Shown piece after piece: positions 45,807 to 51,650 of a stretch of DNA of 64,000 nt; the first letter of the stretch is position 1; each line of letters starts with the position of its first letter. The notes under the pieces are model-generated. The model was not told where the DNA came from. It searched no databases and saw nothing but the letters and a program-made list of their open reading frames with translations. The translations under genes were made by a program, and so were the position numbers. The stretch spans positions 6,554,761 to 6,618,760 of the forward strand of contig SMSO01000031.1 in assembly GCA_004764695.1 (NCBI GenBank), read 5' to 3'. The stretch comes from Schizochytrium sp. TIO01 (Eukaryota > Protista > Bigyra: Labyrinthulomycetes).

Positions 45807-46512
45807 AGTTTTTCGTAGCATCGCACCTCTTTGCAATTATAAGTTCGAAGCAATGCAAAATTAGGACAACGTGCTTGTACAAGCTTGATTTCGCATTACC
45901 GTGTGTAATCAATCTTACAGCGTAGTCTGCAGAAACTACAGCACATGACATGTATGGCTTGCAAAGACTCATATTCCAAATTGGGAATGCATATGCATGT
46001 CTGCTATCTATACCCTCATAGTTCGCTAGTTTGTCTATTTCATCAAACTGTCACTCATCTGCTTCCTGTCTAAAACAGCTGGCACGACCTTGTGATCTGT
46101 GTATCACAGTTTATACATCTCTGAATACATACTACCTACTACTCTACTATCATATAATTTTCTAATTGTTGAAAATTCTCTTTCTCAAATTTTTGTCAGA
46201 CTCCATGCATGAACTCCTGTTACATGCAAAAACGAATGTATGCTATTTAGATGCAACATTGCTCGCTCCGAAAGGCTATATTTATTTCATTCGAAACTAA
46301 ATTAATCATTTGATAATAATAATAATAATGATAATAATAAATGAAACTAAACGAAACTAAGAAGTTGTGGGTATCCAAAAGCTCAACAAAACTAGTACTC
46401 TAGGAGGCGCTCCCTACAGCTTGCAGAAGGACGCAGCCTTCCGGTGTAAACTTGAGACATTAGCTTGAGCTACGTCACACATTATATTAAACAAAATCTG
46501 AAGAGTGTAGCA

Positions 46513-47540
46513 ATGCTTCAGATCAAACTCACTTGCAAGAAAGTCCGGGTGCAGCTAGACAACGTGAACGTGGAGTCCACTGTTGGAGAACTTAAGCAAC
46601 GCGTGCAAGAGGAAGGCGACAGTCGTCTTGCACCGGAAGCCCAACGAATTTTGCTCAAGAGTAAAGAGCGAAAAGATAGCGTACAAATTAAAGAAGTACT
46701 CACGGCAAATGACTTGAGAAAGCTTGAGAATGGTGATGACGTCTCACTTAAAGGGATGATCTTGCTGACAGAGCGTTATACAAATGTGCTTGATGAAACT
46801 ACTGAATTAGATGCAGAGGAGCAAGACGAAGAAGATGAGTCTGGGGCTGATCCCGAAGCCCACAAGGCAAATTTAACCCCCCTACTTGATGCAGGTGACC
46901 TAGATGAAGGTGCGATCTTACTCAATGTACAACAAGGAAAAGATCTCTTTCAGGTTGTTGCACCCCGTGACTCTTGGACAATTTTGGACGTGAAGCTTAA
47001 TTTGCAGAGCCGCGTAGGTGTGCCCGTCGCGCAGCAACGTTTGTTAATTAAATCAAAGGTCCGTGACAACAATTCTACACTCGTGGAATGCAGTGTGAGT
47101 TCGCCTGGGCCAGTCAAAGCTATGTAAGTTGAATTGATGCAAAACCTAGTTCATGCACGACGTAGGGTTACACCTACACATGAGATGCTTGTCAATTTAC
47201 TGACTTTCTACAATTTTAACACAGGCTTTTGTTCTCTGCTGGATACCACATCGCCCAAGATGGTGCTGCATACCTCGAAATTGCAGATGAGGAGCTCCAA
47301 CGTTGCCAAGAACTTATGCGCAAGATCAAGTCACAGTTAAGCCACCGTGTGGCAGACGCGTTTGAGCTGTCACTGGAGTTGAGTGCCGCAATCGATCGCT
47401 TAGAAAATGTTCAGAGTGGACTTGATAGACCTGTGCCCCAACAACAACGCGATCGGAAAACCAAGGTTCTCCAAGGACTAGCCGAAACCATTGAGAAGCT
47501 GCAGCACATTAGGAAATACGGAGCCAGAACAGAAAAGTAG
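46513..47540 (+). CDS. Two ubiquitin-like domains + C-terminal BAG-like helical domain (putative Hsp70 co-chaperone), 2 exons
   Basis: STVGELKQRV..PEAQRILLK and TILDVKLNLQSRVGVPVAQQRLLIK (UBL). Phase-2 intron 47124-47224 (GTAAGT..ACTGAC..CAG). C-terminal LENVQ..RDRKTKVLQGLAETIEKL resembles BAG. Confidence 0.7.
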
Positions 47541-47875
47541 CTGTACTATGCAAATCTGTCAAGAACAAAACAAGCATTGCCTTGCTTGATCCAGCCAGCA
47601 TCGCACGCTTTACTTCTTTATTTCAAACACAGAAATCTAAAAGCCAATGTCAATATGTTTATTCATATCAACACATGTCATACTTTATAAACTAGTGCTT
47701 GGCGTACCTAGCACTCCTGAAGTTTGTAATATATCAGCACAGGTTTATACGGAAGAAATAAAACACCGAAACAATCAAAGCAAGACAAAAAAATACTTGG
47801 TTTCCCTATGTAGGGAGATATAGTGTTACATCCTTGGTATATGATTATTCACAGCTCCAATACAAGCATCAGCTT

Positions 47876-50875
47876 TCATTTCCTCTTCTTATAATCCTCA
47901 TCATCAGGATACTCACGCTTCAATTTGGCTATGATTGCACTGTGGCTTCTATCAACAGCTGCAGGGTACCCGTCGAGTCCAAGTGTCGATTCTACAAACT
48001 TTACAGTCTTTTGCGCTGTAACCATTCGCTTCGTTGCTCGTTCCCCGCATCGAGGATTGCAATGCGTGCTTGCATCTACAGGCACTTCACCAATGGTGCT
48101 TTGCCAAAGACTCTGCAAATTAGCGAAGAGGACGCGTTTCCTACGTTCAAAGTCTGATTCATAGTTAACCTCTGGGTCGGTGTGTGCGAAGCGTTCACTC
48201 AAAGCACGACGAGTCTGGCCCATAACACCCATCGACATCCAAGCAGCAAAAATCTCATAACAAAGAAACGCAGTATCTACCAACACATTACGAATGTCTC
48301 GTTTAGTAAGAGCTCGGTTCTGCTCCGCTGCGTCTCCAGCTCCAAATAAACCGTACATGAGGAAAACGCAGCCTACAAGTTTTGAGAACATCGCAAACTC
48401 AAAGATTTTCCCCTCCCACGCAAATTCATAATAGTTCGGGAAATGTATAAGGGACCACATTGTAAGTGTAATTTCGATTGAGAAGATTGACATGTATACT
48501 GTCATGTCAAACTGAGGATGGTAGATCCCGGTGGCCAAGGCGAAAATCTTGAATAAAAACAGAATCACCATCACAAAGGTCTTGTCCCATACCCGTTCAA
48601 TTGAAGCTAGCTGCTGTTTATCTTCGTCACGATACTCATTCCACTTTGTGTCATGTGGCCAACGAACGAACGATAGGACAAGATGCCGTCCTGCGCCACA
48701 TGCCTCCATAGCCGTCGCCAAGGGCTCGTAGTTGGTAGCGTGAAATACACGACCACGAACTGCATATCCATTACCTTCGCCGCTGGGAACCAGCATATCA
48801 CCACATTTGATAGGGCCATGAACCTTAATTGGAACTTGACCTAAGAAACCACACAAAAGACCTTTAGCCCTTGATGCACCTAATGGCACGCCCGCTGCGA
48901 CGGAAGGCGCTGTGCTCACCACCAAAAAAGGACCAAGGCCAGAAGTGTCACGCGTGATTTTTTGTTCAGGCGAACGCAACTGAACTACATCACCCGGCTC
49001 AATAAGTTCATCAGGGTTCAGTTTCTCAAACCATTCTGCGTAATCAGCAGCCTCCGGTGGGGTTACCAACTGGCCATTGATACCACCCTCCACGGTCAAA
49101 GTTCCCATCACATGAAGGTTGCGTACCCAGAGATCGCTCTTGAAAACAGCGTCTCCATGTACTTGGAGGCCACCGTTTACGTGAACGATATCATCTGGCG
49201 CCCCGCTGTCTTTGCTATAGACGTAGGAAAGTAGATTTCCACCAGATTTTGTTTGAGGATTTGCATCCCGAGATCCCATTGAATCGGTCCCTGGTGAAGC
49301 AGGTCCTGGGCGATTAGTCGTTTCTGCATGAGGAGACACGCCCTCCCGTGATTTATAGGATGCAGGTGCGTCAACAGGTGTTGTGCGACCAGATGGAGGG
49401 CGAGATTCACTGCTTCGTGACTCCGTTCCTGCACCTTCCGTGCTGCCACTTTCCAGCTCAGACTTTGCGCGTTTATTGTCGGGATGTTGCGCCAGTGGCC
49501 AGAAATGTACGAGGGATGGTATATCAGGTACAACGTACAATCTACAGTTCGACTTTTTCACTTCTGTATCTACATCAGGTCGCCGAATTAGGTTAAACCA
49601 GCGTCCAGTGTAACCGTGCGAAGGACTTTGATTAGATCCGGTCTTATACGAGCGAACTCGCCTACTCATTTTCCGCGCTACTACACCACACAAATAGTCG
49701 CTTTTAGGAGACCACCAAATCTCACCATTAGAGAAACTTTGGTACTTGACACCTACCAGCAGCTCTGGAGAGCCCAATGATTCTTGCCGTTCTGCTTCTG
49801 TCAATAAATTTGCTGTGTTCTGCACAAAAAAACAGGGGGTATCAGTACAAATAGGCGACGCTTGTGGCCGTGTTGGAATGTCCGCTGCAAGCTGTCCCTG
49901 GCTGGCAGCAACTAACAAGTCATACACTTGGTCAAAGCTAAGAGATGAATCTGTCTCTGGAGAGCTCGTACTTGCTATTTGCGTTGCGCCTCGTTTTGCA
50001 CGCAAAGGCTCTCCAGAGGTAGGGCTTTGCCTATTGGTATCTGATGCTGTCTCCCCAGTTGGACTTGATCCTTCATTTTCGTGTGACGACGACGATGAAG
50101 ATGATGGCGCTGGGCGCAGTTGCTGAGGGCGTGCCCCCTGTGGTGGTGAGTTGGTCGAGGTGTGAGACGCATAAGTGGATGGCATCGTGCCGGCTTGAGA
50201 AGGCCTTGATGGTGAGGATGAAGGTGCTGACGAGGTAGTTGAAGAGGAAGAAGACGAAGACGAAGAAGATCCAATTGGCATTCTTGACGCAGAATTGGAA
50301 GGCGGCATATGTTGACTGCGCTGGATTCCGCGTTCAAAAGAAATTGGCAGCTCATCATCTTCTGATTCTTGTATAATCATTAAATCGTCCAAACCTTCAT
50401 CAAACCCAGAAAAGCTATTGGCGCTCCCACTCGAAGTCATGCCTCTCCCAAAGGGAGCGACTTGAGTATTATCTAATGGTGCAAAGCCTTGGCGCATTTG
50501 CATGTCCACAGTCGCGGGATGCTGCATTGCCTCAGTCGGAAGACTGCTCTTTGAAATAGGTACACTTGAAGCGTTGCTAGAATGGTGACTATGAATAGTT
50601 GGAATGGATGGAACGTACATGTGAGCTCCATAATTAAAATAAGATCCTGCCGAACCAGGTGGGGCACTAGGATGAGCTTGTCGCAGAACATTTTGTTCAG
50701 GCAGTGGACGATGTTGCTGTTGCGAATGCGCTTGGGAATGCATCGAAGTAAACTGTTGGGCAGATATTGCTGCAAGGTTTTGTTTTGACTCATCTGCGCC
50801 TCTTAAGTTCGATGCATCCCTGTTCGATCTGCTGCCATTATTGTTATATGGCAAAGGATAATGTGAAGGATTCAT
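47876..50875 (-). CDS. Putative membrane-tethered, self-cleaving protein: S/Q/P-rich region + globular (CG-1-like?) domain + beta-helix + peptidase G2-like autocleavage domain + 4 TM
   Basis: 999-aa ORF containing ADYAEWFE..IEPGDVVQL..VVSTAPSVAAG..GFLGQVPIKVHGPIKCGDMLVPSG..GYA, preceded by VHVNGGLQVHGD..LHVMGTLTVEG repeats and followed by four hydrophobic helices. Confidence 0.8.
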   Translation of the reverse strand: MNPSHYPLPYNNNGSRSNRDASNLRGADESKQNLAAISAQQFTSMHSQAHSQQQHRPLPEQNVLRQAHPSAPPGSAGSYFNYGAHMYVPSIPTIHSHHSSNASSVPISKSSLPTEAMQHPATVDMQMRQGFAPLDNTQVAPFGRGMTSSGSANSFSGFDEGLDDLMIIQESEDDELPISFERGIQRSQHMPPSNSASRMPIGSSSSSSSSSSTTSSAPSSSPSRPSQAGTMPSTYASHTSTNSPPQGARPQQLRPAPSSSSSSSHENEGSSPTGETASDTNRQSPTSGEPLRAKRGATQIASTSSPETDSSLSFDQVYDLLVAASQGQLAADIPTRPQASPICTDTPCFFVQNTANLLTEAERQESLGSPELLVGVKYQSFSNGEIWWSPKSDYLCGVVARKMSRRVRSYKTGSNQSPSHGYTGRWFNLIRRPDVDTEVKKSNCRLYVVPDIPSLVHFWPLAQHPDNKRAKSELESGSTEGAGTESRSSESRPPSGRTTPVDAPASYKSREGVSPHAETTNRPGPASPGTDSMGSRDANPQTKSGGNLLSYVYSKDSGAPDDIVHVNGGLQVHGDAVFKSDLWVRNLHVMGTLTVEGGINGQLVTPPEAADYAEWFEKLNPDELIEPGDVVQLRSPEQKITRDTSGLGPFLVVSTAPSVAAGVPLGASRAKGLLCGFLGQVPIKVHGPIKCGDMLVPSGEGNGYAVRGRVFHATNYEPLATAMEACGAGRHLVLSFVRWPHDTKWNEYRDEDKQQLASIERVWDKTFVMVILFLFKIFALATGIYHPQFDMTVYMSIFSIEITLTMWSLIHFPNYYEFAWEGKIFEFAMFSKLVGCVFLMYGLFGAGDAAEQNRALTKRDIRNVLVDTAFLCYEIFAAWMSMGVMGQTRRALSERFAHTDPEVNYESDFERRKRVLFANLQSLWQSTIGEVPVDASTHCNPRCGERATKRMVTAQKTVKFVESTLGLDGYPAAVDRSHSAIIAKLKREYPDDEDYKKRK

Positions 50876-51564
50876 AATGGCAACGTGTAGTTTCTCCCAC
50901 TACAAAACCAAAATTGAAGTCTGACTCTTTCCTTTCTCCCGGTCCCTCAGACTTTGATTACACGCCTACGAAAAACCTGCCGGGCTGAGCACCAAAAATA
51001 GATAGAAGACCTTCTTCGCAAATAGTTCACCAAGTTGATCAATTTTGATCGTGTAGAGTGCGTCTACAAATAACGTGCTTGAAACAACAAAGAATAAAAT
51101 GCTGCTCCAGTACCGCCAACCACGTGCAAATTACGGCCGTCTCTAGAGAAGAACAACAGCAAGATCTCTGATCTCAACCCTCGCCAGGGAATTGCGAGCG
51201 TCTTCTTGTCCCTTGCAGACAATACGCAAGGTGCGCGCGCGGAGGAAACTCGGACCACAAGAGCGCCTGCCCGAGCAAAGGAAGGATTAAACGAATAGTC
51301 AATGGCCCCTTCAGTGATCCACCAAGCGATCGCCAATGGCGCAGTGCCGCAGGTTGTCCTCTACTCCCGCTGCTTAACGCAAAGCCCCGCCAGGTCCGAG
51401 GTGTCTCGCAGCCCCTAGGGCTAGCCTCCGCCGCTCCAAGCTCGCTCTCCGCAGGCCTCGAAGTGTCTTTGAGTACTCGCGCGGCTGCCGACCTCAGCGG
51501 ATAGGACTCCGCTATCCGGCGCTACGAGCTCCCTCGTTCAAGAAGGGCCCACGGAAGCCGGCCA

Positions 51565-51650
51565 AAGTGAGTTATAGAGGAGCACAAGTCGACTATAGAC
51601 TCCCGCAAGTGGGTTATAGCGGGGCCGCAAGTGGGTTATAGAGGCGCGTA
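51565..51650. repeat. Four degenerate 21-22-bp direct repeats (AAGTGRGTTATAG core)
   Basis: aagtgagttatagaggagcac / aagtcgactatagactcccgc / aagtgggttatagcggggccgc / aagtgggttatagaggcgcgt. Confidence 0.75.

What the first reader, a model, noticed from the sequence alone, without database searches (positions are those of the whole stretch)
47876..50875. MYRF-like logic from different parts: putative membrane-tethered transcription factor with a phage peptidase-G2-type autocleavage domain
Seen, N to C: S/Q/P-rich low-complexity region (aa 1 to about 310); globular domain (about 312-460); NKRAK NLS-like motif; beta-helix-like repeats VHVNGGLQVHGD..LHVMGTLTVEG (about 563-603); AA|DYAEWFE (D611/E614, nt about 49045) with downstream GDVV, VVSTAP, GFLGQVPIKV and GDMLVP (to about 740); four TM helices (about 765-885). 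Established (recalled, not searched): DYAE..GQVxV..GD is the pattern of the peptidase G2 intramolecular-chaperone domain of Bacillus phage phi29/GA-1 neck-appendage proteins, which trimerises a preceding beta-helix and cleaves itself off just before the Asp using the Glu. Animal MYRF and Dictyostelium MrfA use the analogous phage S74 domain to release a trimeric TF from the ER. Inference: a convergent self-releasing trimeric TF built on a different phage chaperone-protease, with predicted cleavage at about A610/D611.
Basis: partly seen in the sequence, partly recalled or inferred. Interest (0 to 1): 0.9.

Follow-up and report, generated by a model that had tools for sequence, protein, structure and literature searches.

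The report
Self-cleaving membrane-tethered transcription factor candidate
A marine protist (labyrinthulomycete-like) gene joins a plant-NAC-like, probably DNA-binding domain to a phage tail-spike self-cutting chaperone (Peptidase G2 type) and a membrane anchor. This looks like a second, independent invention of the trick by which animal MYRF frees a transcription factor from a membrane.

Summary

- **G2 similarity is real.** Pfam alone is sub-threshold (13.5-18.8 bits; cut-off 25). A family profile matches phage G2 domains in hhalign (96% probability, E 2.5e-9). The AlphaFold model's best PDB matches are phi29 gp12 (3suc, Z 14.0; 3gqh, Z 13.3), with D611 on gp12 D692, the first residue of the released fragment.
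- **Catalytic residues.** D611 and E614 are invariant in 58/58 relatives.
- **Trimer.** A homotrimer is predicted (ipSAE 0.87; best control 0.00).
- **No S74 or NDT80.** This is not MYRF.
- **N-terminal domain.** It defines an unnamed family of about 124 representative clusters, is basic (median +7), and resembles only plant NAC DNA-binding domains (Z 6.9-7.6).
- **G2 tracks the membrane anchor.** 39/42 G2-bearing members have TM helices after G2, against 4/57 members without G2.
- **Paralogues.** This genome has seven: three tethered and four soluble.

Best reading: a MYRF-analogous self-releasing trimeric factor. Cleavage, nuclear entry and DNA binding are untested. The scan noted two paralogues elsewhere in this genome with the same reading.

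The parts
47876..50875 (-). Complete single-exon CDS, 999 aa plus stop
   Evidence: An identical 999-aa protein is in the public collection (P0001). RNA contigs are colinear with the genome.
47672..51447 (-). Approximate transcript extent: about 570 nt 5' UTR and about 200 nt 3' UTR, with no intron
   Evidence: One 3776-nt contig of run X8 covers 47672-51447 without gaps. Run X3 holds spliced RNA, shown by a GT..AG joint in the neighbouring gene, and covers 47724-51578 without joints.
49946..50875 (-). aa 1-310: S/P/A/Q-rich low-complexity region with an acidic patch around aa 160-180 (candidate activation region)
   Evidence: Composition. Not conserved in length among homologues. The activation role is inferred.
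49490..49945 (-). aa 311-462: conserved basic globular domain with a NAC-like fold (candidate DNA-binding domain); invariant ASP 339-341, W388, G397, R401, M403, HG 420-421
   Evidence: AF2 pLDDT 90.1. VIA Z 6.9-7.6 to all seven NAC-domain entries, with the next unrelated fold at 2.6. Net charge median +7 across 124 members. No Pfam family.
49463..49477 (-). aa 467-471 NKRAK: NLS-like basic cluster just after the N-domain
   Evidence: Aligned homologues carry KKRRK, KKRK, KRKKRKR or RKRAK here. Enrichment is modest: 44% of members against a 28% background.
49196..49462 (-). aa 472-560: S/T/P/G-rich, unconserved linker, probably disordered
   Evidence: Alignment A1 is gapped and variable here. 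pLDDT is below 50 at the start of the aa 551-765 model.
49052..49195 (-). aa 561-608: beta-strand stalk predicted to form the intertwined trimer interface (triple beta-helix-like)
   Evidence: Long strands at model residues 14-54. Homotrimer ipSAE 0.87 against best control 0.00, with the interface at model residues 10-62.
49043..49048 (-). Codons A610 and D611: predicted self-cleavage bond. E614 (nt 49036-49034) is the predicted catalytic glutamate.
   Evidence: D611 aligns with gp12 D692, the first residue of the released C-terminal fragment in 3gqh. D and E are invariant in 58/58 relatives.
48656..49051 (-). aa 609-740: compact Peptidase_G2-like autochaperone / self-cleavage domain (tandem beta-tulip)
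   Evidence: Foldseek top hits 3gqh and 3suc. VIA Z 14.0 and 13.3, rmsd 2.4 A, 25-27% identity. hhalign probability 96.2%. PF11962 matched in 13/19 family members at E<=0.1.
48221..48589 (-). aa 763-885: membrane domain with four hydrophobic segments and the conserved H-x-P-x-Y-x-x-F loop, preceded by a juxtamembrane helix at aa 743-764
   Evidence: Hydropathy. Helix at model residues 193-214. Conserved W763 and the HxPxY motif.
47879..48220 (-). aa 886-999: variable, charged C-terminal tail (RRKR 911, KKRK 996)
   Evidence: Not conserved among homologues.

Best explanation
The gene encodes a membrane-tethered transcription-factor precursor that frees itself.

**Proposed mechanism**
1. The protein has no signal peptide, so its first 760 residues face the cytosol. 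It is held in a membrane, probably the ER or nuclear envelope, by a four-helix C-terminal domain.
2. Three chains assemble through the beta-strand stalk (aa 561-608) and the Peptidase_G2-type tandem beta-tulip autochaperone (aa 609-740).
3. As in phage phi29 gp12, trimerisation positions the invariant Asp611/Glu614 pair to cut the chain between Ala610 and Asp611.
4. The protease domain stays on the membrane. A trimeric N-terminal fragment (aa 1-610) is released. It carries a low-complexity region, a basic NAC-like domain, an NLS-like cluster and the stalk.
5. The fragment enters the nucleus and binds DNA.

**Shown here**
- Gene integrity and transcription.
- G2 homology at profile and fold level.
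- Register of the cleavage site and invariance of D and E.
- Predicted homotrimer.
- Near-perfect co-occurrence of G2 with TM helices.
- NAC-like fold and positive charge of the N-domain.

**Inferred**
- Cleavage itself.
- Which membrane holds the protein.
- Nuclear import.
- Sequence-specific DNA binding.
- Any regulation by the conserved membrane domain.

**Component odds**
- G2 homologue: about 0.95.
- Self-cleaves: about 0.75.
- Released fragment is a nuclear DNA-binding factor: about 0.6.
For: - **Pfam.** PF11962 is the only recurrent family. It matches 13/19 members at E<=0.1 and always the same profile region, 31-99. The relative P0119 passes the cut-off at 26.1 bits.
- **Profile comparison.** hhalign of the family against nine phage G2 domains gives probability 96.2% and E 2.5e-9. 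It pairs AADYAEWF with SDFAEYFE and GQVP with GQIAV.
- **Fold.** The AF2 model (pLDDT 80.5) has 3gqh and 3suc as best Foldseek hits (E 1.7e-4 and 2.5e-4). VIA gives Z 14.0 and 13.3, rmsd 2.4 A and 25-27% identity. Model residue 61 (D611) aligns with gp12 residue 692, and D692 is the D of SDFAEYFE.
- **Catalytic residues.** D and E are invariant in 58/58 relatives.
- **Trimer.** Homotrimer ipSAE 0.87 against best control 0.00. The three runs agree in at least 81% of contacts and pLDDT is at least 79.
- **G2 tracks TM.** 39/42 G2-bearing members have TM helices after G2, against 4/57 members without G2.
- **N-domain fold.** All seven NAC entries score Z 6.9-7.6 over 111-125 residues. SSR4, a chromatin-remodelling subunit, scores 4.3-4.8 and the next fold 2.6.
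- **N-domain charge.** Net charge is positive in 98% of members, median +7.
- **Soluble paralogues.** The four in this genome consist of the N-domain plus long low-complexity (Q-, N- or S-rich) regions, typical of transcription factors.
- **NLS-like cluster.** Basic KKRRK-type clusters follow the N-domain in many homologues.
- **Expression.** The gene is transcribed and unspliced.
Against: - No experiment of any kind exists.
- This protein's own Pfam score is below the gathering cut-off.
- The NAC resemblance is at fold level only: Z is under 8, identity is 6-10%, and there is no sequence-profile link.
- The NLS-like cluster is only modestly enriched, 44% against a 28% background.
- Helices 2-4 of the membrane domain are only moderately hydrophobic, and only a hydropathy scale was used.
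- The eukaryotic G2 domain lacks the roughly 50-residue insertion of gp12. Its release step may therefore differ; in phi29, as recalled, release needs ATP.
- The trimer prediction may draw on the model's memory of the solved gp12 trimer (caveat stated).
Confidence: 0.55

Rival explanations
1. The module works as described, with membrane tether, trimerisation and G2 self-cleavage. The released N-terminal trimer is not a sequence-specific transcription factor. It could be a chromatin-associated, RNA-binding or cytosolic signalling or scaffold protein.
For: The NAC match is fold-level only (Z 6.9-7.6, 6-10% identity). The next-best match, SSR4, is a chromatin-remodeller subunit rather than a classical DBD. 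No Pfam DBD is detected. NLS enrichment is modest.
Against: The domain is strongly basic across the family. NAC entries stand well clear of every other fold and cover the whole domain. Soluble paralogues look like typical poly-Q/N transcription factors.
Confidence: 0.2
2. The G2-like domain serves only as a trimerisation chaperone and no longer cuts. The protein stays an integral membrane trimer, for example a nuclear-envelope or ER protein that holds chromatin or another partner through its N-domain.
For: Cleavage was not observed. The domain is a compact variant that lacks the gp12 insertion. It is internal rather than C-terminal.
Against: The catalytic Asp and Glu and their neighbours (A-D-Y-A-E-W-F) are invariant or nearly so in 58 relatives that are otherwise 25-50% identical. 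That is hard to explain without catalysis. G2 occurs only where there is a tether to be cut.
Confidence: 0.13
3. The N-terminal 760 residues face the lumen or the outside. The protein then sheds an extracellular trimeric fibre, as bacterial adhesins and phage spikes with G2 domains do.
For: All characterised G2 and beta-tulip autochaperones belong to extracellular or virion fibres. The closest non-family relatives are FG-GAP fibre-like proteins.
Against: There is no signal peptide or hydrophobic segment before aa 766. The N-terminal region is low-complexity, and basic NLS-like clusters are present. The same N-domain occurs in soluble proteins without a signal peptide.
Confidence: 0.05
4. The gene is a recently endogenised viral or bacterial structural gene with no host function.
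For: The G2 domain is of phage or bacterial type, and weak tblastn hits fall in a jumbo-phage virion protein.
Against: The architecture is conserved across Labyrinthulomycetes and Pelagophyceae. This genome has three tethered and four soluble paralogues. Base composition is host-like. The gene is transcribed. The N-domain is unknown in viruses.
Confidence: 0.02

Closest known systems
MYRF (animals) and MrfA (Dictyostelium): membrane-bound transcription factors released by an intramolecular chaperone auto-processing domain (PMC3742443, PMC3742440, PMC3828593, PMC8326128)
   Same: The same N-to-C logic: low-complexity or activation region, DNA-binding domain, NLS, triple-beta-helix stalk, phage-derived self-cleaving trimerisation chaperone, then transmembrane anchor. 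Cleavage just before the chaperone would release a trimeric N-fragment.
   Different: The protease module is of the Peptidase_G2 (beta-tulip, Asp/Glu) type rather than Peptidase_S74 (Ser/Lys); no S74 hit was found. The DBD is NAC-like rather than NDT80/Ig-like. NDT80 gave no match in this genome, but that search's controls did not ring either. The anchor has four helices with a conserved loop rather than one TM plus a large luminal domain. The lineage is stramenopiles. It is not a family member.
Bacillus phage phi29 gp12 pre-neck appendage, domain D4 (Peptidase_G2, PF11962; PDB 3suc, 3gqh)
   Same: Homologous fold (Z 14.0, rmsd 2.4 A, 25% identity). The D-[YF]-A-E-[WY]-F motif is in the same register at the start of the domain, as are the GQ[VI] and GD motifs. 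It is preceded by a trimeric beta-stalk and predicted to form a trimer.
   Different: The domain here is compact, about 130 aa against 163, and lacks the roughly 50-residue insertion. It is internal and followed by a membrane domain rather than being C-terminal and discarded. It is cytosolic in a eukaryote. The useful product is a presumed nuclear factor rather than a virion spike. This protein is below Pfam's gathering score.
Plant membrane-tethered NAC transcription factors (NTL/NTM type)
   Same: A NAC-like fold at the N-terminal end of the conserved part and a C-terminal membrane anchor. The family also has soluble members, as NACs do.
   Different: No sequence-level relation to NAM PF02365. 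From general knowledge, plant NTLs are released by separate proteases rather than by a built-in one, and they act as dimers rather than trimers.
Bacterial-looking FG-GAP fibre proteins with a C-terminal compact G2 domain (P0144, P0145, P0147) and the Pseudomonas jumbo phage PA5oct virion protein gp359
   Same: They carry the same compact G2 variant: 43-46% identity to aa 590-745 with the motif GGADYAEW[LV]. The PA5oct protein gives a weak tblastn hit, E 0.03.
   Different: They have no N-domain and no TM after the G2 domain. The G2 domain is terminal, as in classical fibre autochaperones.

Membership tests
Peptidase_G2 (Pfam PF11962 / MEROPS G2) | Pfam HMM score above the gathering cut-off (25 bits) | tested here: not met
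   13.5 bits for the whole protein and 18.8 bits for the domain alone. The relatives P0119 (26.1 bits) and P0006 (24.3 bits) reach or approach the cut-off.
Peptidase_G2 (Pfam PF11962 / MEROPS G2) | Profile-level homology to bona fide phage G2 domains | tested here: met
   hhalign of the family profile against nine phage G2 domains: probability 96.2%, E 2.5e-9, 103 columns.
Peptidase_G2 (Pfam PF11962 / MEROPS G2) | Tandem beta-tulip fold of gp12 domain D4 | tested here: met
   3suc Z 14.0 and 3gqh Z 13.3, rmsd 2.4 A. The next rows are beta-tulip capsid decoration proteins at Z 10.6 or less. The D4 tandem beta-tulip description is from 10.1101/216911.
Peptidase_G2 (Pfam PF11962 / MEROPS G2) | Asp at P1' and Glu three residues later at the domain's N-terminal boundary (gp12 D692/E695) | tested here: met
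   D611 and E614 align with D692 and E695 and are invariant in 58/58 relatives. The catalytic role in gp12 is recalled from Xiang et al. 2009, which could not be fetched.
Peptidase_G2 (Pfam PF11962 / MEROPS G2) | Homotrimer with a preceding beta-helical stalk | tested here: met
   Complex prediction with three copies: ipSAE 0.87 against best control 0.00, interface at aa 560-612. This is a prediction only and may reflect memory of gp12.
Peptidase_G2 (Pfam PF11962 / MEROPS G2) | Autocatalytic cleavage after trimerisation | not testable with these tools
   Needs protein expression with D611 and E614 mutants.
MYRF / MrfA | Peptidase_S74 (ICA) domain | tested here: not met
   No PF13884 hit in the protein at E<=1. 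S74 domains exist elsewhere in this genome, in other proteins.
MYRF / MrfA | NDT80/PhoG-type DNA-binding domain | tested here: not met
   No PF05224 hit in the protein or in the genome (the controls did not ring either, so genome absence is weak). The N-domain fold matches NAC rather than Ig-like NDT80.
MYRF / MrfA | Transmembrane segment C-terminal to the self-cleaving domain, with the N-terminus in the cytosol | tested here: met
   Hydropathy peaks at 766-882 and none before. This is an analogous feature, not evidence of homology.
NAC (NAM, PF02365) transcription factors | NAM HMM or sequence-profile match | tested here: not met
   No NAM hit in the protein, in 77 relatives or in the genome. 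Profile searches of PDB sequences find no NAC.
NAC (NAM, PF02365) transcription factors | NAC-domain fold: N-terminal helix packed on a twisted antiparallel sheet | tested here: inconclusive
   All seven NAC entries score Z 6.9-7.6, rmsd 3.5-5.0 A, 111-125 of about 145 residues, covering the whole domain. NAC is the only fold at Z 5 or more among 48,161 chains. Z is under 8 and identity is 6-10%.
NAC (NAM, PF02365) transcription factors | Sequence-specific DNA binding | not testable with these tools
   Only the indirect evidence of net charge, median +7.

The most novel reading that the evidence does not exclude
Stramenopiles independently built a MYRF-like self-releasing trimeric transcription factor from entirely different parts. 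The parts are a previously unnamed NAC-like DNA-binding domain family, which would extend the NAC/WRKY-GCM-type fold outside plants, and a phage or bacterial Peptidase_G2 beta-tulip autochaperone acting as a cytosolic, membrane-proximal protease. This would be the first eukaryotic cellular use of a glutamic G2 peptidase and the second known capture of a phage tail-spike chaperone for transcription-factor release. The conserved four-helix membrane domain would act as a sensor that gates trimerisation or cleavage.
Probability: 0.45. Interest if true: 0.88.

Novelty: new variant of a known kind. Interest (0 to 1): 0.8.

Why it matters
MYRF and MrfA have stood as a singular case of a phage tail-spike chaperone reused to release a transcription factor from a membrane. 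A second system built on a non-homologous phage chaperone-protease (G2 instead of S74) and a different DNA-binding fold would show that this solution is evolutionarily accessible and recurrent.

It would also:
- give the Peptidase_G2 family its first cellular eukaryotic role;
- define a new candidate transcription-factor family, NAC-like and of about 124 representative clusters, in Labyrinthulomycetes and Pelagophyceae, groups with few characterised regulators and with biotechnological (thraustochytrid oils) and ecological (brown-tide algae) importance;
- offer a compact self-cleaving trimerisation module, about 180 aa, for protein engineering.

The tethered and soluble paralogues within one genome form a natural experiment on what the tether adds.

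Tried and rejected
- **PDB sequence searches.** Neither the single sequence nor the whole-family profile found gp12. The link needed hhalign and fold comparison.
- **PF11962 against the genome.** A six-frame search found nothing, not even this gene. The Pfam model is too far from this compact variant, so that blank means nothing.
- **tblastn against 50,697 phage records.** This gave only weak hits (E 0.03) to a PA5oct-group virion protein that has no Pfam match of its own.
- **ESM Atlas.** No usable hit for the N-domain or the membrane domain.
- **LGFP repeat.** The hit is weak (PF08310, E 0.016-0.078, about 18 residues: VKYQSFxNGxVWWS). One bacterial LGFP protein, P0083, was drawn into the N-domain search. 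I take this as a short beta-hairpin motif resemblance, not homology.
- **Histone H2A and SnoaL 'fusions'.** In P0142 and P0146 the extra domains lie after the membrane region, and the H2A piece covers only the C-terminal part of the histone fold. They were not used as evidence. I suspect, but did not check, that the H2A piece comes from a merged gene model.
- **MYRF in this genome.** S74 exists here but in unrelated architectures, and no NDT80 domain was found.
- **Xiang et al. 2009.** The paper could not be fetched. The gp12 mechanism is therefore cited from memory, plus the residue range of 3gqh.
- **Literature.** No paper in the held library links Peptidase_G2 to eukaryotic proteins or membrane-bound transcription factors.


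Full report
**1. The gene**

Window 47876-50875 (minus strand) is one uninterrupted 999-codon ORF that starts at the first ATG of a 1007-codon open frame. An identical 999-aa protein is already in the public protein collection, unnamed (P0001). Base composition matches the surrounding DNA.

Public-run contigs show transcription without splicing:
- Run X3 carries a GT..AG joint that skips 47124-47224 in the neighbouring gene, so it holds spliced RNA. It covers 47724-51578 with no joint.
- Run X8 has one 3776-nt contig colinear over 47672-51447.

These bound an mRNA with about 570 nt of 5' UTR and about 200 nt of 3' UTR. Contigs cannot give expression level or strand.

**2.

The first 310 residues are S/P/A/Q-rich. 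Four hydropathy peaks lie between 766 and 882 and none precede them, so there is no signal peptide and the long N-terminal part should be cytosolic.

**3. The self-cleavage module is of the Peptidase_G2 type; no S74 match was found**

- **Pfam.** It gives only a sub-threshold PF11962 hit: 13.5 bits for the whole protein and 18.8 bits for the domain alone, against a cut-off of 25. The same profile region is hit in 13 of 19 homologues. The relative P0119 passes the cut-off at 26.1 bits. No S74 hit appears.
- **Profile comparison.** I took nine bona fide G2 domains from phage records. These are phi29 gp12, which scores 325 bits on PF11962, Nf, SPbeta-like, and Clostridium, Staphylococcus, Cobetia, Xanthomonas, Prochlorococcus and Synechococcus phages. 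I compared their alignment with the family's aa 575-745 columns by hhalign. The result was probability 96.2%, E 2.5e-9 over 103 columns. AADYAEWF pairs with SDFAEYFE, GQVP with GQIAV, and GD.L with GD.I.
- **Fold.** An AlphaFold2 model of aa 551-765 (pLDDT 80.5) has the gp12 C-terminal fragment 3gqh and premature gp12 3suc as its two best PDB matches in Foldseek (E 1.7e-4 and 2.5e-4). VIA-align gives Z 14.0 and 13.3, rmsd 2.4 A over 118 and 112 residues, and 25-27% identity.
- **Lower rows.** These are beta-tulip capsid decoration proteins and MoeA. That fits the published description of gp12 D4 as tandem beta-tulips (10.1101/216911).
- **Register.** Model residue 61, which is D611, aligns with gp12 residue 692. 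That residue is the first of the crystallised released fragment and the D of SDFAEYFE.
- **Conservation.** Across 58 G2-bearing relatives that are otherwise 25-50% identical, this Asp and the Glu three residues later are invariant. The flanking A, Y, A, W and F are nearly so.
- **Compactness.** The domain lacks a gp12 insertion of about 50 residues.
- **Same variant elsewhere.** It ends long FG-GAP fibre-like proteins that look bacterial (43-46% identity). It also gives a weak hit in a jumbo-phage virion protein.

**4. Trimerisation**

Three copies of aa 551-765 fold into one complex with ipSAE 0.87 in all three runs, against 0.00 for the best of three controls. The runs agree in at least 81% of contacts, and pLDDT is at least 79. 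The interface runs through aa 560-612, which is the stalk and the cleavage site, plus parts of the tulips. The calibration used dimers, and the solved gp12 trimer may have been memorised. This supports binding but does not prove it.

**5. The N-terminal globular domain**

- **Model.** aa 301-470 fold with pLDDT 90.1 and pTM 0.84.
- **Fold search.** An exhaustive comparison with 48,161 PDB representatives finds a single fold at Z 5 or more, the NAC domain of ORE1 at Z 6.9. A second look scores all seven NAC entries at Z 6.9-7.6, with 111-125 aligned residues covering the whole domain. SSR4 follows at 4.3-4.8 and everything else is at 2.6 or less.
- **Sequence level.** There is no link to NAM, so this is a fold resemblance only.
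- **Family size.** A profile of the seven paralogous N-domains (A4) finds only 124 proteins among 1.84 billion representatives. None has a known Pfam domain apart from G2.
- **Charge.** The domain is basic: median net charge +7, positive in 98% of members.

**6. Family logic**

This genome has seven N-domain genes.
- Three have stalk, G2 and TM helices: this one, C33 (684 aa) and C36 (798 aa).
- Four are soluble. They consist of the N-domain followed by long low-complexity regions that are Q-, N- or S-rich, and they have no G2 and no TM.

Across all relatives with room after the last domain, 39/42 G2-bearing proteins have TM helices after G2. Only 4/57 proteins without G2 have any. G2 therefore appears essentially only where there is a tether to cut. 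This is the strongest comparative argument that it is the release device.

Basic KKRRK-type clusters follow the N-domain in many homologues. Their enrichment is modest, 44% against a 28% background.

Named relatives come from Labyrinthulomycetes (Mucochytrium, Hondaea, Aplanochytrium) and Pelagophyceae (Aureococcus, Aureoumbra, Chrysophaeum). The window's organism is therefore most likely a labyrinthulomycete.

**7. Mechanism proposed**

The mechanism is a cytosolic N-terminus and a four-helix anchor, then trimerisation through the stalk and beta-tulips, then Asp611/Glu614-dependent cleavage at A610|D611. This releases a trimeric fragment, aa 1-610, that carries the NAC-like domain and the NLS-like cluster, followed by nuclear entry and DNA binding. 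The G2 domain stays on the membrane.

The conserved membrane domain (W763, HxPxYxxF loop) may regulate the process. That last point is pure inference.

**8. Comparison with known systems**

It works like MYRF/MrfA (PMC3742443, PMC3742440, PMC3828593, PMC8326128) but is not a member. S74 and NDT80 are both absent from the protein. In this genome S74 occurs only in unrelated architectures and NDT80 was not found.

By profile, fold and catalytic motif it is a divergent member of the Peptidase_G2 superfamily, although it falls below Pfam's cut-off.

It resembles plant membrane-tethered NACs in fold and topology only.

No paper in the held library connects G2 peptidases with eukaryotic proteins or membrane-bound transcription factors. 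That includes a 2026 survey of such factors.

The scan's own index holds notes on the two tethered paralogues of this genome with the same reading. I re-derived each claim here, and those notes are not independent evidence.

**9. Verdict**

Observation confirmed and interpretation supported. This is a new variant of a known kind.

Cleavage, localisation and DNA binding remain to be tested. My confidence is about 0.55 for the full chain, about 0.95 for G2 homology and about 0.75 for self-cleavage.

Noticed in passing
Own genome: L019:2491-4803:- (C4), L022:1814-4018:- (C4, tandem neighbour), L021:2544-4643:- (C35), L020:3783-6179:+ (C13): Four soluble paralogues carry the NAC-like N-domain but no G2 or TM. 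Three of them (L019, L022, L021) share a second conserved C-terminal domain of about 180 aa (AFD.FK..C....EFA.WY...) that has no Pfam match. L020 is almost entirely poly-Q/N/S/T outside the N-domain.
   Followed up: partly
window 46465-47540 (+): The neighbouring gene encodes a protein with ubiquitin-like domains (PF00240, E 2.8e-11). It has a 101-nt GT..AG intron at 47124-47224, confirmed by a spliced contig in run X3.
   Followed up: partly
Own genome C36:3324256-3327192 (L023:1257-4193:-): A 979-aa ORF has a Peptidase_S74 chaperone domain at its N-terminus (aa 46-106), followed by ATAD3_N and an AAA ATPase domain. This is an unusual placement for a tail-spike chaperone.
   Followed up: partly
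Own genome C24:1489361-1491337 (-); C6 (L024:3869-7591:-); C34 (L025:1811-3058:+): Further S74 domains occur in this genome. There are two in a 10,882-codon open frame on C24. One lies at the C-terminus of a 1241-aa protein with an N-terminal hydrophobic segment. One lies in a 416-aa ORF. None has an NDT80 domain or a TM after the S74 domain.
   Followed up: partly
P0144, P0145, P0147 (925-1061 aa), P0143: FG-GAP repeat proteins that look bacterial have long Ala/Gly/Val-rich repeats and end in the same compact G2 variant (GGADYAEW[LV], FVGRAPVKV). They are candidate relatives of the donor of the eukaryotic domain.
   Followed up: no
P0142 and P0146 (Chrysophaeum taylorii): These family members are annotated as histone H2A C-terminal and SnoaL-like proteins. 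The extra domains lie after the membrane region. The H2A piece may come from a merged gene model (not checked). Such names should not be propagated. P0005 of Hondaea is likewise named F-box/WD repeat protein 7 on the strength of a weak N-terminal WD hit.
   Followed up: partly
window 49700-49760 (aa 373-392): The motif VKYQSFSNGEIWWS gives weak hits to the bacterial LGFP repeat (PF08310; PS1 protein 6swz). It pulled one LGFP protein (P0083) into the N-domain search. This is probably a beta-hairpin motif resemblance.
   Followed up: partly
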